Below, in pieces: positions 46,880-57,144 of a stretch of DNA of 64,000 nt (its first letter is position 1; every line of letters starts with the position of its first letter). The position numbers and the translations under genes were made by a program. Source of the stretch: Bigelowiella natans CCMP2755. Its lineage: Eukaryota > Protista > Cercozoa. The stretch lies in the NCBI GenBank assembly GCA_000320545.1, contig ADNK01001475.1, forward strand, positions 37,900-101,899. The letters are read 5' to 3'. The notes under the pieces are model-generated. The model was not told the origin of the DNA, searched no databases, and worked only from the letters and a program-made list of their open reading frames with translations.

Positions 46880-49849
46880 TCTCATCGTCGTCGTCGTCGT
46901 CGTCACATGCGATGAAAGAGAAAGTGACGGTGATGGAATATACGAACATGCCTGGGCTGTTGAAAATCGTCAATTCTGAGTTCTTCTATTTTGATCTCCA
47001 TTCCAGATAATAGTCTTCGGAATTATAAGAATAAGCACAAGAAGGAAGTAAAAGTAAGTAGCGATCATGAAAAACGGCATGAAATCCTTCAAACAGAAGA
47101 GTGGAGTGAGCATTCCTTGGCTGAGCTACCACTTGCAGTGAAGCAACTTTGTAAGTGCCTTGATCTCAAAATTGGTGATATTATGGCGGGAAGGAAACAG
47201 CACAGTAAATGGTTACAAAAGGATATTGAATCGGATGAGCTCTACAAATTTGGTGTGATTATTCATAAATTGACAACATTTGGAGAGTCTCTTTCATGCA
47301 TAATCTTTTCCCCATTTTGATTTCTGACGGTTCTACACACAATTTGGAATTATCTTTAAAATTTTTATATTATATTTATATTATACTCTACTTTAGCGCT
47401 GTCTTTAATTATGGGGGGTGGTGAAACTTATAACCATTCTTTGTTGTCTTTTAATGCTATCTCTATGTTCACACTGAATGATTTTTAGTTTCACATACTT
47501 ACTAGTTGGAAACTCATTCTCCTTTTTTGGTTCTTCCTCCTCCTCCTCTTCCTCCCCTCTGCGCACATACTCTATCATCAAGCGCGTTCAATATACAATG
47601 GTTTTCATTTCATGGTTGCCGATAAGAAGAAAGGGAAAGAGCTGATCATTTCAGCAGCGAGGCGGGGCAGTATCGTAGCAGAAGGCAAATGCTATCACGA
47701 GGGATGGGGAGTGGAGAAGGTAGATAGTCTGATGCGTTGAAAGTTGCCATCCCCTCCTTCTCCTCCTCTTATCGTTAATGTAATAATCAAGGGCGTTCAT
47801 AACCTTCATACTATCCATGATCATCATCACCTACATCATCTTAAGATAAAATTTCTTGCCGTTTTACATGATTGCCCATTAGAACGTTTCAAAGGCTATC
47901 GAGTTTTATCTGAGGGCGGCCGAGAGTGGCAACTCGTGTGCGCAAAACTTAATGGGGACTTGTTATTCCAAGGGAGAAGGGCATCTTGAGAAGGATGGCA
48001 AAAAAGCCATTCATTGGTATCGTAAAGCAGAAGCTCAACAACACTGCGGTGCTCAGTGCAACGTGGGAAATTGTTGGAGAGACGGGGAAGGCACAGGAGG
48101 AAAAGTGGACTTTAAACGGGCTGTTGAGTGGTATGTATTTTGTTGTTCTTTCATGCTCATCCCCTTTCTACTGCCAAGATAACTACTCTAGTATGTAGTA
48201 ATTTTTACTGCTGATGCAGCTGCTGCTAGTGATAAAAATAACGATGAGCAACAACATAGGTACCGAAAGTCGATCGCTCATGGAAATAGTTTCGCGATGT
48301 TCAATCTTGCAATATGCTATGAGACAGGGGAAGGAGTATCTGTGGACTTCACCAAGGCTGCTGAATGCTATAAGCAAGCAGCAAGACAGGGAAATGCTGA
48401 CGCACAATTTAACCTTGCCATTTGTTTTGAAACGGGTGATGGTGTGGAACAAGACTACACCAAAGCTGTTCAGTACTACAGGTCGTTAGTGGTGGTGATG
48501 AATACTAATGCGAACTACGAAACACTTTTCATTCAAAGTGTGCCCCAAAGCTCGCTGTCGTCATCGTTGTGTGCTCTTGTGTGTTTGCGTATGTGTGTGT
48601 TTGTGTGTGTGCATATGTTTTACTACATAGAGCTGCAACTGAAAGTGGAGATTGCAGAGCAATGTACAACTTAGCACACTGTTTTGACTCGGGCAAGGGA
48701 GTAACTCGCGACCCTGCGGAAGCGGCCTCATGGTCATTACATCAAGACAATCATGAGATAGATCGATCGTCACTGATGCAGCACCCTCCTCGACTTTTTG
48801 ACACCATATACGTGATCGTGATTACTGACTGAGTTCCACAAATCATCGAAGATGCCACAAAAATATGTGTAATAATTAGGTACCAAAGGTCAGCTAAGCT
48901 GGGGCACTCAGGAGCACAATGGTAGTCGTAGTAGAAGGAATGATAGTACTGGTAGCAGAAGTAAATGTGGTGGTAACAATGATGGATATTGTTGGAGCAT
49001 AGTAAGAGTACTGGCAGTATTAGTAGTAGCAGTAGTGATGGTGAGGTAGAAGCAGGGATAGCATTAAGATAGCTCGAAATTACCGATGAAAGCATTGATA
49101 AAATACCACATCATGCAGTAATCTAGGGAATTGCTTTCGCAATGGAGAAGGACTTTCGCAGGATTTCGAGAAGGCAGTATATTGGTATTATCAACGGCAC
49201 GATGATGATATCGGACAATGACACAATAGCAATGTTGGAACACAGCAATGTAATCCACCTCTCTCCTTACTCAGGTATTCTGAAGCAGCAAAACAAGGAA
49301 ATAGCGATGCACAGTGCAATTTAGCCCACTGCTACAATGGGGGAATGGGAGTGTTACAAGACCATAAGCTGGCTGTAGAGTGGTATAGGAAATCAGCCAA
49401 AAGAGGCCATTCTGGAGCACAAGGTAGTAGCAATAATAGTTAGTAGCAGTGGAAGTAGTATTTAGGTTCTATCATAAAGGCGGTAATGTTGGATACGCAT
49501 AGAAGCAAGCTGACTTCGAGGACGATGGATAGCATGAAGCATGAAGCGAATTTTGTGTGTACACTTCGATTATATATCCCTTCTTACTTCTTGCGATTAC
49601 GTCTATGTTGGTTGTTCCGTGTACCAACTCTGAAAAAGCATCTTCACCTTCATGTAGTTATTGAATCACTCTTTCCTGCCGATATAATCTTGTTCCTTAG
49701 GTGTGCTTGGTGACTGCTACAGGGCTGGAGAAGGTGTTACAAGAGACTACAAGCAAGCAGTGCTTTGGTATCGCAAGAGCTCGAACCAAGGAAGTCAGGA
49801 CTCTTTGTGGAAATTGAACACTTTAATGAAAGTCCTAAACGATTTTTAA
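46400..49849 (+). CDS. Sel1-like repeat (SLR/TPR) protein
   Basis: About 8-9 Sel1 repeats: AQNLMGTCYSKGEG..KDGKKAIHWYRKA, AQCNVGNCWRDGEG..VDFKRAVEWY, MFNLAICYETGEGVSVDFTKAAECYKQAA, AQFNLAICFETGDGVEQDYTKAVQYY, LGDCYRAGEGVTRDYKQAVLWYRKSS; stop TAA at 49847-49849. Confidence 0.9.
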
Positions 49850-49879: not shown

Positions 49880-51064
49880 CATCGTTTGCGACACTTAACA
49901 GCAATGTAAATTCATTGACGGTAGCATGCAGGCATCGACGTAGCATACATGTGGGAGCAAACTAGCAAGTGCTACGTGAAAGCTGCACATGTCTACACCA
50001 TTGTTCATTATATGGACATTATGTTGCATCAGAATTATCTCTGGAGCTTGGTCGCTCGCGTCGCAGCTGCTGGCAGTCACGTTTCTGGCCGGTTCTTGCT
50101 AGCTTGGTGGAAAAATCAACTTCCTTGATCGATGGAAAGTGGCGGATGTGCATCACATTGCCGACTCCATTGAAAATGCTAATCATTCTAGCCACATGCT
50201 AGCATGCTGCAATGCGCCGAATGGACAGAGGAAGAAAGATTTGTTGATGACAACTCATTGCGCGCGACACACGACGTGTGCAACACGATGGCACACGCGC
50301 AGGCTAGCAGGCAACGTGCACGCAGGCAACACGACCAGAACACCGCTGCCAACGTGAAGAAGAGGAAGCGTTTGCAGAAGGTGGAAACGCATCCGAAGTG
50401 ATTCCAAGAAGAAGAAAAGTTGTCGGTTGATTGATTCGTGTGTGTTCCCCACTTCGACACTTCGACACTCCAACAATGATCGAGGTGGTGTGCCTCAAAC
50501 AGCTTGTGGCACAGGCAGAAAGCGAGAAAGCGATCAGTAGACCTCTCTGTAGTCGGATGACCTGAAATGCAAGTCCTTTTTCATCTGCGACTGCCTTACA
50601 ACCGGGGATCTCTCAACTTATCTCATCAACACGATGAATCAAAGAGCTCATTTCATGCAGAAAGAATGAAAGAGAGGCAATCAAGTGGCTGCGACAACAT
50701 TTTAATGTGCGAATGCTCTAGATGCTAGTACTTTTGGCCTTCATTTGAGGAGCAAAAGACGCATAATCTGAGGAGCCTCATTGTGTGGCCAACCTACGTG
50801 CTCTTCTTCTTCTCACCCCCGATGGGCGATGGGCAGGGGTGGGACTGCACACTGGTATTTCTTGCTGACAACTATGCACAGTGTCTTCAATTTGTGGAGA
50901 CCCTTGGATGCAGTGAGGACCAACACAAAAGGAAGCGAATGGATGAGGAAACTTGGTGGAAAACTAACGCCAATGAAGCCAGTGCAATGTCGGCTGAGAT
51001 CATTCAGAACTTTAAATTCGCTGCCGACAGTCTCTCTCCGACGACAACAGAAAGGATTATATAG
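49880..51064 (+). pseudogene. TpA-depleted spacer carrying eroded ORF fragments (50204-50401, 50783-51064) of unknown origin
   Basis: 50200-50530 is almost TA-free apart from gctag. The fragment WTEEERFVDDNSLRATHDVCNTMAHAQASRQRARRQHDQ has His/Cys where Tyr would be plausible. No family recognised. Confidence 0.35.
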
Positions 51065-51310
51065 TGCCACATCACGATTTCCAATGCGATTGAGAGATCG
51101 AGAAAATGTGAGTGAACTTGCACACAATACATGCATTTTATGATATATTAGTGAATGGATGATGCTGCTGCTGCTGCACACCAAATGGAATCTTTGTGCA
51201 GATAGAGACATCTCTCATGAAACCAAAAACGTGATCCAATAATTTTTCCGAATGGCATCAAGTATAATGTTGATCTTCTCATCATTCCACACTAATCCTC
51301 ATCACATGTC

Positions 51311-52036
51311 TTGCAGTACCTTGCCAGCCGCTGCAACTCTGTAGCAGTCGCTGCATCAAGTAGCCATCCTCTACGCTACCAGCCCCTTAGTAGACTATGT
51401 CAAGTTTACGTATCCTTTCCCTCCTCTGCTTCTTCTTCTTCGTCTTCTTCCATGAACGGTGTCGGTTGGAATAAAACTTCACCCTCTTCCTCAACATATT
51501 CTTCATCCCCCTTGTCGTCATCACCTCGATCACCCTCTTCCTCAACATATTCTTCATCCCCCTTGTCGTCATCACCTCGATCACCCTCTTCCTCAACATA
51601 TTCTTCATCCCCCTTGTCGTCATCACCTCGATCACCCCCCTTTAATCATCGTGGGAATCATCAATTTCCAACCCCCTCTCGACCACCTATTTCTTCTTCT
51701 TCTTCTTCTTCTACTACTTCGTCATCATCATCATCATCATCATCATCACCATCACCATCATCCCTGCCTACTTCAAAGGGAATTGGGTTTCGTCAGAATG
51801 GCACCTCCCTCCCCCTCCCCAAGGCGTCACGGTCGGTGGGGCAGTCATCAGCTACTCGTCGATACGACAATAGCAATGGTAGAGTCAATTTTATCAAGAG
51901 AACAGCAGCAGCAGGAAGAGGAAGGGGGGGGGAAGGAGGAGGAGCAGCTCCCTCAATTCAGGGCCAGCGGATACTACCGAATCGAACCTCATACCAACAA
52001 CAACAGAAGAAGAACCAACTACACCACCACCACCAC

Positions 52037-52072
<36 letters not shown>

Positions 52073-53294
52073 TTGCTTCTTTTAAAGCCATTGCGGCCAG
52101 GAGAGACGCATTCTCCGACTGCTTCTCCAACATCCCCATTTCATGCCGCAAGTGCCTCGCCATATCATCAAAGGCAGCAGCAGCAGCAACAGCGGGCAAC
52201 TATCCGATCAAGGTGCTTGACGACTGGCACATGCTCACATGATGATGATGATGATGATGATGTGATGATGATGATGATGGTTTATATTGTCGTAGTTGAT
52301 TCTCATTCTTTCTCTTTCTACGACTAGTAGGCAATCGTCGATCATATCTTCAATGCTACCTCGATTTCGCAGCAATGAAAACAAGACAAGTAGGATGATG
52401 AAGAAGAGTGAATTTCGAAGAACATTTGTGGATGATGGGACTGCTACTCCTCGAGATCGGTCTACCTCACCGTCGCCCAAATCATCACCACCACCAGGAG
52501 AAGTGGTACTTACTTGCTTACTAACTTGTTGCACACACATCCTACAATGCATATCTCCCCCTTCTCCCCGTCTAACAAAGGCAAGCACACACTCACTCTT
52601 TCTTAACTACTGCTGCTCTCCCTCTTGCACACGCACACACAGTCGTCGCAATACTGGGATAGTCGTCAAGGACGCTATGACTTGAAAAAGCTGGATATTG
52701 CCCTGTCCTACTGGATTGAGGACCTTGCCACCGCACTCATGGGAGAGCCGAATATAGCACTAAGCTCTGGTAGTGACGGATTGTAGCGGATATGATTACA
52801 GCTGCATTTCCAAGCATATAGTGTTGTTATTATTGATGTTGCTGTTTGTTGTCATCGACGATCCCTCTTATTCTCCTTAAAGTAGAGTCATTACTACCGT
52901 AATGGATGCATGTTATATGTGTGCTGCTTGCTGCAATGCTTCTTCCCATATCAAATCTACATAGAAGAGGAAATGAGGTATGGCAACAAAGGCTCTTTTT
53001 GCGTTACGACTGATGGGAAGTTCCAGGGACGATGGTATGATTTCGAGACTGGAGAGGTGATATATAAGTAGTAAGTAGTAGTAGCAGTGAGTAGTAGTAG
53101 TCGATGATGATGATGACGATGGCGTTGGTGATGGTGTACCTAGACGGCAATTCTCAGGATGGATGATGATATATTGCACGAGAAACAATAATGTTGTTTC
53201 GATACAATATATCGTTAACAGTTTCTGTATTCTTCTTCGTCACAGAGATTTTCCTCGGATTAAGTTGTTTTCCACAACAGCAGCTACTAATAAT

Positions 53295-53326
<32 letters not shown>

Positions 53327-56300
53327 TCTAATTTGTTGTTGACATCTTCAAAGAACGGCGGCCCTTTGAAGCTAATACAAGCTAAGATAGACTCGGATTT
53401 CAGAACAGCCCTCCACTACGCTCTCAAGGTATGCATGATTGATTGATGATGAGATATAGTGTCTTTGTGTTACAGAAGTCGTGTTTTTGAATTATTCTTT
53501 GCATCCCTATCGAATTATGAATATCCAAATTACATTATTAGAAGTCCAATTCATCATCTTTCTACTTGTCTAAATATGCGTAGTTCGTTGTGAAACAAGA
53601 GCATGAGAAGGGCTCCGTCCTATACAACAATAACAACAACAACAACGGCAGCAGTAGCATTGGGGATCATAGTAGTTATCCTCCCTCCTCCTCTTTATCA
53701 TCATCATCATCATCATCACCGAGATTAGCGTATGATGTATCTGAGAATGCTGCTTCAAGAGGTGAATAATCTTATTATCCTAATGCTGCTTATGCAATTA
53801 CATCTATTGTTTTATGATCTTCCCCGAAACCAAAACTTACTACTTCTCGCTCGTTTCTGGTGTCAGGCACCGGAGTAAGATACTCAAAGGAGGAAGTAAT
53901 ATCGTTCAATATATATACGTACACACACAGCTACATGTATTGGGGTGGTAGAAAGGGATAGGGGGGAGAGGGAAATTACGCTCATATTTACGGAGTTCAC
54001 TTCTTCATCATCATCATCATCATTATCATCATCATTACCATCCTCACCATCATCATCGTCATTACTGCTCTTTGATGCATTATCAACACAACTATCGTTT
54101 TTGTTATCAAGTGCTGTTTTCTACTGTCTAACGATTTTTCGTCCTTCCCCCCCTTTTGTCCTGCCTCCAATATTAGAGAAGGAATAAGACGAGAGAGTAT
54201 GCCATGCGGCTCTATAGAGAAAGCAGACCCATCATGTAGTACACACCCTGAATAGTAATAATAATGATATCATGATTTCTGGGGCAATATGCATACATAC
54301 TACATACGTACTACTACTCTTTAATTCATGCAACAACAACAACAATAATGATGAATAGTGCTCAATATACAGCTATCACCATGTAGTCCCCCCCCCCCTC
54401 CCCCACCTCAATAAAATTGCTAAGATACGTTTTCATGATACAAAAAGGGGCAGCGTGGCGGAGAAGTACCTCCGTGAGGAGAGGAAGATATCAGCTCCTG
54501 TAGATGCCAAAAGTGTGCGGTTTCATCCTATGGTGCTCACAGGGAGAATCGATGGATTTTTGTAATAATAGACATGTACCCATATTAGACGATACGGAAA
54601 TTGATAAAACAGTCACATCTGGGGGATGTATATATAAATACATGTATATAATGTTGTTAATTCCATGGTTCTTAATGTTTCGTTGCATCTTCTCATCGTG
54701 TATACCACACCACATCCGTATGATAATGTTAGGAAACTTCCTGCTCTTATTGCTGTACTGAGAGATGCTGAGGTGATAGATACGATATACGACGATACGA
54801 GCTAATGATAAACTACTTTCCAAATATGATCATAATGACAACATAATAATATAAAGTGGTGCTTGTCGTGGTGGTGGAGAGCTGTTTCTGCTGTCTTGTC
54901 TTATTTGCTTCAACTCGAGGAGGAGGAGGAGGAGGAGGAGATGCTGCTGCTGCTTTTATCTTGTTAACATATTGTGATATTGTCTGTGCTGCTTTTATCT
55001 TGTTAACATATTGTGATTATTGTCTGTGCTGCTTTTATCTTGTTAACATATTGTGATATTGTCTGTGCTGCTTTTATCTTGTTAACATATTGTCATAATT
55101 GTCTGTGCTGCTTTTATCTTGTTAACATATTGTCATAATTGTCTGTGCTAGATATATGATGTCTAATTGTGTAGTAGTAATCCTCTCATTTACATACCGA
55201 CCATCATCACACGTAAATTACTCACCCTTCTTTCTGCTGCAACACAAACATCAAAATCTACCTCTTTTCAGGGCAATCCATCGTCAATACAAGCTACGTA
55301 TCTAGACCCACAGACAGGAAGAAAACGGGCTAATCTAAATGTAAGTTGTTGTTATTGTTGTTGATGATGATGATGATATGGTGCTGATTGTGGTGGGGGT
55401 GATTTTACAGTACACACTCACACAAACATACACACATACAAACATACACACATACAAACATACACACACAAAAACATACACACACACACGCACACGCAAA
55501 CATACGCTATTGTTTCTCTTCATCACTTTCAAGATTCCAAAGCGGACATACGGTGCATTGAAGGGAGCAGCTGTCACCATATCCAACACAGATCGCCGTG
55601 CTGCGGAGAAGGTAGGATCATTCTTCGATACACACACACACACACACAAAGATATACTGCATACATCATATTCTTTGTCCTCCTTAGATATCCTTCATTG
55701 CGGAAGGCCTCGAAACTGCGCTCAGTATTGGCGAGGTGACTAGTAGTGCCTATACTTTATGATGCCTAAAGCCTATAAGAATAATAAGTATTCTTTCTCT
55801 ATTTCATGTCTAACACTTATTAGAATAAAAAGCACTCTTTCTCATTCGATTTGAAATCTGTGACTACTGATCCTCTCAACTTTATCATTTAGTTTCCTCG
55901 TCCTTTTCCTCCCCCCTCTTCCTCCTCCTTCATTCCTTCTCTTTCTTTCTTTTAAGTGACGATGGCTCTGTGCTGCTGCATTAGGTTGTTAAGGGGCATC
56001 ATATTGTGGCCACACTGGGAAAGCACAACATCAAGCATCTGTTAGGGCATGATCTTGGGGTAACTAGACTACTTCAAACCATCTCGAACGACAACATGTA
56101 AAGAAATATTGGTTTGAGCTCCGATGTTGAGTGTTCGGATATTATTAATCCCCCTCTATACAACGTGGTGTTCTCCTTTATATGTATGGTGTGGTGATTA
56201 TGATCACATCGTCATCACATTACTACTACTACACCAACAGGACACAGTTGTGCTTTGCATCGATAATGACGGAAACGGTACTACTACGACAGCAGCATCG

Positions 56301-56678
56301 TGTTGTTCCACATGATCACACTTTTGTTAGGCTCTTTTCTCAAAGTCAATTTCATTAAATCGACGCTTTTCATCATCATCCCTCCCTCCTTATCCTCAAA
56401 TTAATTGATTGATTGATTGTTGCTATTGTTGCCGTGATGGTCCTCCTCCTAGCTACATTTGCGGATGCGTCTATTCCACGTGCGGTGCTTGAGCTTTATG
56501 AAGGTGGCAAGAAGGTCCTCGTCAGCATGCCCCCAAATGTAAAGACTGACTTTAACGATTTACTGAGAGCGGTCAACGACAAGGGGGGGGGGATGGCCTC
56601 GCCCTCTAGCTATGGCAAGGTAGATTAACGACTGTTACCGATTCGATGTGATTGGATCTTGAGTTCTTGTACATGTGC

Positions 56679-56748
<70 letters not shown>

Positions 56749-57144
56749 CGATATTTTTCCATGCTATTGAAGCACATTGAGTTTCTTGAATATTGTTAGG
56801 AAAATGTGATGCGGTGTTTGTCGCAACGAGTGCCCTGGAATGAGGTATACTAGCATACGTACACACATACTTCTAGGGTTTCTCTCATCACCACTTGGTT
56901 TCAATAATATCAGATTCCAGAGCTGTCAGATGCTGTTAGAGCCCTGCAGTTGCAGAAAATAGAACAGCAGCGACGGCGACAAATGAGAGAAAATTTTTAT
57001 CATCGCCATCATCATCATCATCATCCTCATCCTCCTCATCATCATGATGGCAACAACCCTAGTAATGAGGCGGCAGCAGGGAATAATAACGATGGCTACA
57101 GCAGCACTGATGAAGATGACTTCGATCCGATTTCTCCAGCATGA
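51311..57144 (+). CDS. Bacterial-mobile-element-type DNA primase (N-terminal primase-associated domain + Toprim_3-like domain) with a long low-complexity N-terminus; true start codon unresolved
   Basis: In-phase exons: LATALMGEPNIALSS (52643-52769)|EEEMRYGNKGSFCVTTDGKFQGRWYDFETGE (52965-53056)|NGGPLKLIQAKIDSDFRTALHYALK (53354-53428); EYAMRLYRESRPI; AEKYLREERKI..VRFHP; LPALIAVLRDAE|GNPSSIQATYLDPQTGRKRA; PKRTYGALKGAAV; FIAEGLETALSI (55688-55735); IVATLGKHNI; VVLCIDNDGNG; PPNVKTDFNDLL; stop 57144. Confidence 0.85.
51480..51636 (+). repeat. Exonic 51-bp tandem repeat x3 (SPSSSTYSSSPLSSSPR)
   Basis: caccctcttcctcaacatattcttcatcccccttgtcgtcatcacctcgat repeated perfectly at 51480, 51531 and 51582. 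Confidence 0.95.
54950..55148. repeat. Intronic ~39-40-bp tandem repeat x5
   Basis: ctgcttttatcttgttaacatattgt occurs five times with a ttgtctgtg spacer. Confidence 0.9.

What the first reader, a model, noticed from the sequence alone, without database searches (positions are those of the whole stretch)
51311..57144. Domesticated plasmid/phage-type Toprim primase in a eukaryote, possibly an organellar primase
Seen: a ~15-exon gene with intact Toprim catalytic motifs (AEGLETALS; IDNDG; DFNDLL). It is preceded by LMGEPNIALSS-EEEMRYGNKGS..GRWYDFETGE-NGG..LI and YAMRLYRESRPI..AEKYL..RKI..VRFHP..PALIA..RD..G..IQATYLD. Known: this motif series matches Toprim_3-type primase domains of alphaproteobacterial (including Rickettsiales) conjugative elements and phages; eukaryotic organelles normally use Twinkle or DnaG, and nuclei use AEP primase. 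The first 35 residues of the open frame (YLASRCNSVAVAASSSHPLRYQPLSRL) are Arg/Ser/Ala-rich with no acidic residues, like a transit peptide, though the start codon is unresolved. No helicase domain follows. Inference: a horizontally acquired, intron-colonised primase serving mitochondrial or plastid DNA replication.
Basis: partly seen in the sequence, partly recalled or inferred. Interest (0 to 1): 0.82.

Follow-up and report, generated by a model that had tools for sequence, protein, structure and literature searches.

The report
Plasmid-type DNA primase gene in an alga
A nuclear, intron-rich and expressed gene of the alga Bigelowiella natans encodes an intact bacterial conjugative-plasmid-type DNA primase, and relatives in other marine eukaryotes carry organelle-import-like leaders, so it may be an unrecognised kind of organellar primase, though where it acts is not shown.

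Summary
All the quoted motifs are present and join through GT-AG introns into one open frame that ends at 57144.

The window is Bigelowiella natans. JGI protein Bigna1 136241 is 100% identical to my model (residues 330-762). MMETSP transcript ORFs span every junction of exons 3-19.

The protein is a stand-alone DnaG-type primase with three parts: a zinc-less zinc-finger-like domain, DUF7146 and Toprim_3. All 12 invariant family residues are kept. An AlphaFold model of the Gymnochlora orthologue matches T7 gp4, DnaG and Twinkle primase domains (Z 12-16).

Its closest bacterial relatives are the C-terminal modules of TraI relaxase-helicases of Legionella- and Piscirickettsia-type plasmids (32% identity, E 8e-61).

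Eukaryotic homologues form two clades:
- Clade 1: Bigelowiella, Gymnochlora and an unidentified marine eukaryote.
- Clade 2: picoeukaryote contigs and a sequence from a copepod transcriptome.

Most of them carry N-terminal extensions free of acidic residues, like import presequences.

The supported start is the ATG at 52353 (538 aa), and its leader is only weakly presequence-like. Primase identity is well supported; organellar location is plausible but unproven. I found no paper describing this family in eukaryotes.

The parts
52353..57144 (+). Transcript-supported coding region of the primase gene. 17 exons, 538 aa: 52353-52505, 52643-52769, 52965-53056, 53354-53428, 53584-53761, 53867-53895, 54177-54235, 54448-54561, 54733-54772, 55272-55340, 55534-55611, 55688-55735, 55985-56059, 56241-56277, 56453-56619, 56800-56844, 56914-57144.
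   Evidence: All introns are GT-AG and the exons join in frame. JGI Bigna1 136241 is 100% identical over model residues 330-762. MMETSP ORF P0241 covers residues 330-817 and P0243 covers 588-853 at 98-99% identity.
51084..52212 (+). Hypothetical upstream exons (51084-51107 and 51317-52212). Probably 5' UTR or promoter rather than coding.
   Evidence: They are spliceable in frame, but all three frames are open here and the stretch contains a perfect 51-nt x3 repeat. They are absent from the JGI model and from all MMETSP ORFs. Three of those ORFs are labelled 'complete' starting from the Met at 52353, and an in-frame stop lies at 52293-52295 if the upstream region is not spliced.
52664..53428 (+). 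Zinc-less zinc-binding-domain-like N-terminal domain (exons 4-6 of the 19-exon model; LMGEPNIALSS EEEMRYGNKGSFCV...GRWYDFETGE NGGPLKLIQ).
   Evidence: It aligns column for column with the zf-CHC2 fingers of related Toprim_3 primases, with the Cys/His ligands replaced. The equivalent part of the P0094 structure model matches the DnaG zinc-binding domain 1d0q: Z 8.4, 88 residues, rmsd 3.7.
53584..53895 (+). Lineage-specific low-complexity linker (Asn/Ser-rich) between the N-terminal domain and DUF7146.
   Evidence: It falls in a gap in the alignments to the bacterial homologues. The corresponding linker in the P0094 model has pLDDT below 50.
54189..55578 (+). DUF7146, which corresponds to the N-terminal subdomain of a DnaG-type RNA-polymerase domain (YAMRLYRESRPI, AEKYL, VRFHP, PALIAVLRD, IQATYLD, KRTYG).
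   Evidence: Exon 10 alone hits Pfam DUF7146 (E 7e-4). Orthologue P0094 hits it at E 6e-19; boundaries were mapped across. The fold matches T7 gp4 and DnaG RNA-polymerase domains at Z 13-16.
55694..56580 (+). Toprim_3 catalytic domain. Glu of AEGLETALS at 55703-55705; DxD of IDNDG at 56262-56270; DFND (the 'DaN-' motif) at 56548-56559.
   Evidence: All 12 invariant and 25 of 26 near-invariant columns of a 70-sequence family alignment are kept in the window protein. Orthologue P0094 hits Toprim_3 at E 8e-11. The DaN- motif is described in PMC5512222.
56800..57144 (+). C-terminal extension: a helix conserved in eukaryotic clade 1 (...VPWNEIPELSDAVRALQ...), followed by a His-rich low-complexity tail and the stop codon.
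   Evidence: The W..IP.L motif is shared by the window protein, Gymnochlora P0094 and P0118. Transcript ORFs P0241 and P0243 cover it.

Best explanation
This is the nuclear gene of Bigelowiella natans (JGI Bigna1 136241) for a stand-alone DnaG-type (Toprim) DNA primase of the conjugative-plasmid kind.

Shown:
- The domain order is a zinc-less zinc-finger-like domain, then DUF7146 (the N-terminal subdomain of a primase RNA-polymerase domain), then Toprim_3.
- The gene has eukaryotic introns, is spliced and expressed, and keeps every invariant active-site residue.
- It descends from the C-terminal primase module that F-type TraI relaxase-helicases of Legionella/Piscirickettsia-like bacteria carry.
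- It belongs to a small eukaryotic clade with Gymnochlora and one unidentified marine eukaryote. A second eukaryotic clade also exists.

Inferred mechanism:
- Like the transferred plasmid primases (RP4 TraC, ColIb Sog) and the phage P4 alpha primase, it would make short RNA primers on single-stranded DNA without a dedicated helicase partner, so that a DNA polymerase can start complementary-strand synthesis.
- Nearly all eukaryotic homologues have gained an N-terminal extension of about 40-70 residues that is mostly free of acidic residues. The most likely workplace is therefore an organelle, probably the mitochondrion, where it would prime displaced single strands for the organellar polymerase. 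This location is inferred, not shown. For B. natans itself the leader is atypical.
For: Gene structure and expression:
- Gene model with 18 GT-AG introns in frame.
- 100% identity to JGI Bigna1 136241; 98-99% identity to MMETSP transcript ORFs spanning all junctions of exons 3-19.

Homology and domains:
- 32% identity over about 440 aa to the Legionella TraI C-terminus (E 8e-61) and to Piscirickettsia TraI residues 1514-1822 (E 2e-50).
- Those TraI proteins carry TrwC relaxase + helicase + DUF7146 + Toprim_3.
- Pfam DUF7146 and Toprim_3 are above their cut-offs in orthologues P0094 and P0118.
- All 12 invariant and 25 of 26 near-invariant family columns are kept.

Structure (on the Gymnochlora orthologue, 47% identical over the whole BLAST alignment and 52.5% over aligned residues):
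- AlphaFold2 model with mean pLDDT 88.3.
- Matches: T7 gp4 primase Z 16.2; DnaG RNA-polymerase domains Z 13-15; Twinkle N-terminal domain Z 13.7; DnaG zinc-binding domain Z 8.4. Other Toprim proteins score 8.8 or less.

Link to a characterised primase:
- Phage P4 alpha primase scores as Toprim_3 and aligns to the family profile at probability 96.4%.
- PMC5512222 states that Toprim_3 domains are active DnaG-like primases of conjugative elements with a DaN- motif, and that TraC1 and Sog primases are transferred to prime replication in the recipient.

Eukaryotic family:
- Clade 1 support 99/97; clade 2 support 100/100.
- Homologues lie on contigs with eukaryotic neighbours and introns.
- Eukaryotic proteins have 71-110 residues before the conserved R.G.KGS anchor, against 14-43 in bacterial stand-alone proteins. 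In most, the first acidic residue is at position 25-62.
Against: - No localisation or enzyme assay exists for any member of this clade.
- The zinc ligands of the N-terminal domain are lost. This is also true of the bacterial TraI modules, so template recognition may differ from classical DnaG.
- The transcript-supported B. natans N-terminus has acidic residues at positions 9, 20, 26 and 27 and is only weakly presequence-like.
- The real 5' end of the mRNA was not seen. Only ORFs derived from transcripts were available, not their nucleotides.
- No targeting predictor was available; my leader statistics are crude.
- I could not check whether B. natans has a Twinkle or DnaG primase.
- Structure and Pfam results were obtained on the Gymnochlora orthologue, not on the window protein itself.
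Confidence: 0.55

Rival explanations
1. The same enzyme, but it works in the nucleus or cytosol, for example in repriming or repair of nuclear DNA or acting on foreign or viral DNA. It would not be an organellar replication protein in B. natans.
For: The transcript-supported leader contains acidic residues early and basic clusters (KTSRMMKKSEFRR; QQRRRQ near the C-terminus) that could equally be nuclear signals. No signal peptide is present, so plastid or nucleomorph targeting is unlikely. The long low-complexity linker and His-rich tail are typical of many B. natans nuclear proteins (my own knowledge, not tested here).
Against: Orthologues and the second eukaryotic clade almost all carry acid-free, Arg/Ser/Leu-rich N-terminal extensions such as MLRLVSPRARWALQALHG.... 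These are hard to explain for a nuclear protein. Nuclear DNA already has AEP-type primases (established knowledge).
Confidence: 0.27
2. The domain has been re-used as something other than a primase, for example a Toprim nuclease or a DNA-binding factor. Its primase-like fold would then be only heritage.
For: The zinc ligands are lost. There is no helicase or helicase-binding domain. Toprim domains also serve nucleases and topoisomerases, which gave weaker structural matches at Z about 8.
Against: The whole three-part primase architecture is conserved, not just the Toprim domain. The structural match to primases (Z 12-16) stands well above other Toprim proteins (8.8 or less). The basic and aromatic residues of the RNA-polymerase N-subdomain (Q, LD, K, K) are kept along with the acidic metal ligands. 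The zinc-less state is shared with the bacterial TraI modules.
Confidence: 0.12
3. A decaying or functionless recent transfer, or bacterial contamination of the assembly.
For: Horizontally acquired genes often decay. Isoforms that retain an intron occur: P0223 reads into intron 16.
Against: There are 16 spliceosomal introns inside the transcript-supported coding region. Transcripts are correctly spliced. A eukaryotic Sel1-repeat gene lies upstream. An orthologue in another genus is 47-55% identical with every invariant residue kept.
Confidence: 0.03

Closest known systems
C-terminal DUF7146-Toprim_3 module of F-type TraI relaxase-helicases (Legionella pneumophila and Piscirickettsia salmonis plasmids, and many uncultured relatives)
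   Same: Same three-part module, including the zinc-less N-terminal domain. 30-38% identity over about 350-440 residues (E down to 8e-61). In trees the eukaryotic proteins nest inside this group.
   Different: The eukaryotic protein is stand-alone: it has no TrwC relaxase and no helicase. It has spliceosomal introns, an N-terminal leader, a low-complexity linker, and a clade-specific C-terminal helix with a His-rich tail. It cannot act in conjugation.
Transferred plasmid primases RP4 TraC1 and ColIb/R64 Sog, and phage P4 alpha primase (the EGYATA-motif Toprim primases)
   Same: DnaG-like Toprim primases of mobile elements with the EG..TA and DaN- motifs. P4 alpha scores as Toprim_3 and aligns to the family profile at 96.4% probability. 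They prime ssDNA without the host DnaG-DnaB coupling (PMC5512222; my own knowledge for P4).
   Different: Only distantly related in sequence (about 24% identity to P4 alpha). P4 alpha keeps a real zinc ribbon and is fused to a D5-type helicase. TraC and Sog sit in large polyvalent proteins.
Twinkle / T7 gp4-type organellar primase-helicases, and bacterial DnaG
   Same: Same fold of zinc-binding domain plus RNA-polymerase domain (Z 12-16). Twinkle is the known organellar primase in plants and many protists (PMC5737085, PMC6299598, listed).
   Different: No sequence-level similarity detectable with HMMER against PDB sequences. No helicase domain or DnaB-binding domain. A different evolutionary origin: a conjugative plasmid rather than a T-odd phage or the bacterial chromosome.

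Membership tests
Pfam DUF7146 + Toprim_3 primase-like proteins of conjugative elements and phages | DUF7146 domain above the Pfam gathering score | tested here: met
   Orthologues score 68.7 bits (P0094) and 67.3 bits (P0118) against a cut-off of 27. For the window protein, exon 10 alone gives 20.4 bits, E 7e-4. The full spliced window protein could not be submitted to the Pfam scan because it has no reference. Locally it scores 356 bits against the family HMM built from A3.
Pfam DUF7146 + Toprim_3 primase-like proteins of conjugative elements and phages | Toprim_3 domain with the catalytic Glu (EG..T), the DxD and the DaN- motif | tested here: met
   AEGLETALS, IDNDG and DFNDLL are present. 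E, G, T, S, D, D, D, N and D are invariant in 70 sequences and kept in the window protein. Toprim_3 scores 42.7-56.7 bits in the orthologues.
DnaG-type (Toprim) primases | Fold made of a zinc-binding domain plus an RNA-polymerase domain (N-subdomain and Toprim) | tested here: met
   AlphaFold2 model of orthologue P0094, pLDDT 88.3. VIA-align Z 16.2 to T7 gp4, 14.7 to B. subtilis DnaG, 14.4 to the Aquifex primase over model residues 35-415, and 8.4 to the zinc-binding domain 1d0q. This was tested on the orthologue, not on the window protein itself.
DnaG-type (Toprim) primases | Four Cys/His zinc ligands in the N-terminal domain | tested here: not met
   The ligand positions of zf-CHC2 relatives (CPFH...HCFGC) read RYG-...YDFET in the window protein. 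They are equally lost in the Legionella TraI modules.
DnaG-type (Toprim) primases | Template-dependent RNA primer synthesis | not testable with these tools
   Needs an enzyme assay. Inferred only from homology to P4 alpha, TraC and Sog.
TraI conjugative relaxase-helicase | TrwC relaxase domain and SF1 helicase domains N-terminal to the primase module | tested here: not met
   The residues upstream of the primase module are low-complexity and have no Pfam hit. The supported protein starts about 50 residues before the module. Piscirickettsia TraI has TrwC + AAA_30 + TraI_2B.
Nucleus-encoded organellar replication proteins | N-terminal targeting peptide and organellar localisation | tested here: inconclusive
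   Homologues mostly have acid-free leaders. The B. natans leader has its first acidic residue at position 9 and no signal peptide. No predictor or localisation experiment was available.

The most novel reading that the evidence does not exclude
Marine eukaryotes of several lineages use a previously unrecognised organellar primase. The lineages are chlorarachniophytes, at least one further high-GC marine eukaryote, abundant picoeukaryotes and possibly copepods. The enzyme was captured, perhaps twice independently, from the 'pilot' primase module that TraI relaxases of intracellular Legionella-like bacteria carry into recipient cells. A conjugation protein built to prime incoming single-stranded plasmid DNA would thus have been re-used to prime single-stranded mitochondrial (or plastid) DNA. 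That would make a third evolutionary source of organellar primases, beside Twinkle (T7 gp4) and DnaG.
Probability: 0.4. Interest if true: 0.8.

Novelty: new variant of a known kind. Interest (0 to 1): 0.64.

Why it matters
How organelle DNA synthesis is primed is unsettled outside animals, yeast and plants. Known solutions are Twinkle-type primase-helicases, DnaG in some algae, the mitochondrial RNA polymerase, and AEP-type enzymes in kinetoplastids.

A helicase-free primase of conjugative-plasmid origin, held under selection in several eukaryotic lineages and usually preceded by an import-like leader, would add a new solution. It would also be a clear case of a plasmid transfer protein being domesticated by eukaryotes. 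PMC5512222 reports such re-use for the ArdC-N domain only, and describes Toprim primases as confined to conjugative elements.

It also gives a concrete, testable candidate: one gene, three obvious active-site mutants, and a leader that can be fused to GFP.

Even on the conservative reading, it documents transfer from Legionella-like plasmids into protist nuclei, followed by heavy intron gain (16 introns in 1.6 kb of coding sequence).

Tried and rejected
- Pfam scans of single exons gave only one weak DUF7146 hit. The exons are too short.
- tblastn of exons 17 and 10 against plasmids gave only marginal E-values (3e-3 and 6e-2). These hits nevertheless led to the TraI homologues.
- A mixed alignment of bacterial proteins and window exon pieces did not retrieve the window's own protein from the word-indexed database. 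It surfaced only later, as a cluster member of a hit to the Gymnochlora orthologue.
- A sequence search of the family profile against PDB sequences found nothing meaningful. Only the fold comparison showed the primase relationship.
- My first 19-exon, 853-aa model with exons at 51084-51107 and 51317-52212 is set aside. No transcript-derived ORF includes them, all three frames are open there, and the next gene upstream ends only 22 bp before the proposed ATG.
- A single origin of all eukaryotic homologues is not favoured. The AU test gives p = 0.031, a marginal result, and the groups were defined after a first tree had been seen.
- Naming the organisms behind P0118/P0200 and the clade 2 contigs through cluster names failed, because no names are on record.
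- Seven literature searches found no description of this family in eukaryotes. The library lacks most subscription journals.
- Bacterial contamination and pseudogene readings were rejected (see the rival explanations).

Full report
1. What is in the sequence

I defined each segment by its flanking splice sites. All introns are GT...AG, range from 69 to 499 nt, and the pieces join into one frame that ends at the TGA at 57142-57144.

My maximal model had 19 exons and 853 aa. The window is intron-rich, has 33-50% G+C, and carries a Sel1-repeat gene just upstream.

2. Whose gene it is, and which part is real

The closest database protein to the spliced product is from Gymnochlora sp. CCMP2014, a chlorarachniophyte (P0094). 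It is 47% identical over 438 columns, E 3e-121.

A search with P0094 brought up a cluster that holds JGI Bigelowiella natans protein Bigna1 136241 (aug1.33_g10949, 435 aa) and several MMETSP transcript ORFs.
- The JGI protein is 100% identical to model residues 330-762.
- ORF P0241 covers residues 330-817 and P0243 covers 588-853, at 98-99% identity.

So the window is B. natans, the gene is transcribed, and every junction from exon 3 to exon 19 is confirmed by spliced transcripts.

The JGI model is truncated at its 3' end: it reads into intron 17. One MMETSP isoform retains intron 16.

The two upstream exons of my model (51084-51107 and 51317-52212) are not supported, for four reasons:
- Three MMETSP ORFs labelled 'complete' begin at the Met encoded at 52353.
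- An in-frame stop lies at 52293-52295 if the upstream region is not spliced.
- The region is low-complexity with all three frames open, and includes a perfect 51-nt x3 repeat.
- The preceding gene's last ORF ends at 51061, only 22 bp before the putative ATG.

I therefore take 52353-57144 (17 exons, 538 aa) as the supported coding region.

3. What the protein is

Sequence homology:
- The spliced protein aligns over about 440 residues with the C-terminal part of a Legionella pneumophila plasmid TraI (32% identity, E 8e-61). It also aligns with residues 1514-1822 of Piscirickettsia salmonis TraI (E 2e-50).
- Piscirickettsia TraI has TrwC relaxase, SF1 helicase domains, and then DUF7146 and Toprim_3.
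- The eukaryotic orthologues score above the Pfam cut-offs for DUF7146 and Toprim_3.
- An exhaustive profile search finds 14,180 clusters at E 1e-3 or better. The best 150 are mostly TraI-length proteins of about 1,900-2,100 aa that carry the module at their C-terminus.

Conserved residues:
- In a 70-sequence alignment the invariant columns are the Glu-Gly..Thr..Ser of AEGxETxLS, the two Asp of DNDG, and the Asp, Asn and Asp of DFND.
- The window protein keeps all 12 invariant columns and 25 of 26 near-invariant ones.
- The DFND motif is the 'DaN-' signature that Iyer et al. give for active DnaG-like primases of conjugative elements (PMC5512222).

N-terminal domain:
- It aligns column for column with the zf-CHC2 zinc finger of related small primases, but the Cys/His ligands are replaced.
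- The same is true in the Legionella modules.

Structure:
- HMMER finds no solved structure by sequence.
- An AlphaFold2 model of the Gymnochlora orthologue, built with that alignment, has mean pLDDT 88.3.
- Its best matches are all DnaG-type primases. By Foldseek: Aquifex primase E 2e-9, T4 gp61, E. coli DnaG core, T7 gp4 and human Twinkle.
- By VIA-align: T7 gp4 Z 16.2, DnaG RNA-polymerase domains Z 13-15, Twinkle Z 13.7, and the DnaG zinc-binding domain Z 8.4 for residues 26-127. The next class (gyrase, RNase M5 and other Toprim proteins) starts at Z 8.8.

Link to a characterised primase:
- Phage P4 alpha scores as Zn-ribbon + Toprim_3 + D5-type helicase. That it is an experimentally characterised primase rests on my own knowledge.
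- It aligns to the family profile at 96.4% probability, with AEGVETGLS over AEGYATALT and DFNDVL over DWNDAF.

4. Relatives in eukaryotes

Besides Bigelowiella and Gymnochlora, the same clade holds P0118/P0200/P0201.
- These are 450-aa, intronless proteins on a metagenomic contig of up to 60 kb, 57% G+C.
- Neighbours include ISWI-type SNF2, CRAL-TRIO, CCDC171 and an OGFOD2-like gene, so the contig is eukaryotic.

A second, larger clade holds proteins of about 400 aa.
- They come from marine metatranscriptomes and metagenomes and from the Neocalanus flemingeri (copepod) transcriptome in EukProt.
- Its genomic contigs carry Translin, CLP1, SET, MYND and RWD genes, and the gene itself has short introns.

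In an IQ-TREE analysis (LG+C20 PMSF, 73 rows):
- Clade 1 has support 99/97 and clade 2 has 100/100.
- Both lie inside the TraI-module radiation but apart from each other.
- Forcing them together costs 20.7 log-likelihood units (AU p = 0.031). Two captures are therefore favoured, but only marginally, and I defined the groups after seeing a first tree.
- The bacterial sister groups are unresolved.

Named bacterial relatives include Legionella spp., an Oceanospirillaceae MAG and, more distantly, Caedimonadaceae and Candidatus Bandiella. In some bacteria the module is a separate ORF just downstream of TraI.

5. How it most likely works

Shown: an intact, expressed, conserved DnaG-type primase core with no helicase, relaxase or helicase-binding domain.

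Inferred: the bacterial ancestors belong to the class of plasmid primases carried into the recipient to prime the incoming single strand (PMC5512222). The eukaryotic enzyme probably also primes single-stranded DNA on its own and hands the primer to a polymerase.

Where it acts:
- Eukaryotic homologues have 71-110 residues ahead of the conserved R.G.KGS anchor, against 14-43 in bacterial stand-alone proteins.
- In most of them the first acidic residue comes only at position 25-62, in Arg/Ser/Leu-rich sequence. Examples are MLRLVSPRARWALQALHG... and MFSQQILFRLRGIHRSLPLP.... This is what import presequences look like.
- The supported B. natans N-terminus (MLPRFRSNENKTSRMMKKSEFRRTFVDDG...) is basic, but has acidic residues at positions 9, 20, 26 and 27.
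- It lacks the hydrophobic signal peptide that chlorarachniophyte plastid and nucleomorph proteins need (the requirement is from my own knowledge).
- I therefore rate mitochondrial action as the best single guess, plastid as unlikely, and nucleus or cytosol as a serious rival.

6. Comparison with what is known, and novelty

- It works like RP4 TraC, ColIb Sog and P4 alpha. It is a member of the DUF7146-Toprim_3 family. It shares only the fold with DnaG and Twinkle.
- It fails the zinc-ligand criterion of classical DnaG, and it is not a TraI.
- I found no paper that describes this family in eukaryotes. A review of organellar polymerases in chlorarachniophytes mentions no such primase.
- The polyvalent-protein survey names only ArdC-N as a domain that escaped to eukaryotes.
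- The gene itself is already in the public JGI annotation as an uncharacterised and truncated model.
- I class it as a new variant of a known kind: a familiar enzyme family in an unfamiliar host and role.

7. Verdict

- Horizontal origin, intron colonisation and intact primase motifs hold.
- The donor class is refined to TraI modules of Legionella-like plasmids.
- The specific transit-peptide argument is not supported.
- Organellar function remains a reasonable but untested inference, which rests mainly on the leaders of homologues.

Noticed in passing
window 47883-49846 (+), continuing to about 51061: An upstream gene encodes Sel1-like repeats (e.g. ...NLAICYETGEGVSVDFTKAAECYKQAARQGNADAQFNLAICFETGDGV...). 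Its last open frame ends at 51061, about 1.3 kb before the supported primase start codon.
   Followed up: no
window 51479-51637: A perfect 51-nt x3.1 tandem repeat (17 codons per unit, SPSSSTYSSSPLSSSPR) sits inside a 1-kb low-complexity stretch where all three + frames stay open. The stretch looks like coding sequence but no transcript ORF includes it.
   Followed up: partly
window 54948-55149 (intron 11 of the 19-exon model, the longest at 499 nt): A 40-nt unit is repeated 5.1 times at 97% identity inside the intron. A 16-nt ACACACACACAAACAT array lies in the next intron (55414-55488).
   Followed up: no
L011/L012 (685-4205), L009, and the contig of P0256: In marine metagenome contigs of an unidentified compact eukaryote (48% G+C, short introns), the clade 2 primase gene sits next to Translin and CLP1 in conserved order. 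The clusters have up to 75 members, so the host is abundant.
   Followed up: partly
P0225 (EukProt, Neocalanus flemingeri GFUD01037566): A clade 2 homologue is recorded in a copepod transcriptome, and P0250 on an ENA contig is 71% identical to it. If it is truly from the copepod, an animal would have this plasmid-type primase. Contamination by a protist is not excluded.
   Followed up: no
L005 4343-6343 and L010 5470-6846: In some bacteria the DUF7146-Toprim_3 module is a separate ORF directly downstream of a shortened TraI, rather than fused to it. This shows that the module can work, or at least persist, on its own.
   Followed up: no
P0054 (732 aa, Logan): The zinc-less N-terminal domain alone (51% identical to window residues 394-448 of the 853-aa model) is fused to DUF5906 and VirE-type primase-helicase domains. 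The small domain is therefore a mobile module of its own.
   Followed up: no
model mc16e8d8ae450 against PDB 3fld: Foldseek gives a weak match (E 2.6e-3, about 140 columns) to the C-terminal domain of F-plasmid TraI. This hints that the F TraI C-terminal domain might be a remnant of the primase module.
   Followed up: no
window 56277/56278 and 56619/56620: Database ORFs read through two splice donors. MMETSP ORF P0223 continues into intron 16 (...DNDGNGTTTTAASCCST) and the JGI model continues into intron 17 (...SSYGKVD). This means intron-retaining transcripts or mis-annotation.
   Followed up: partly
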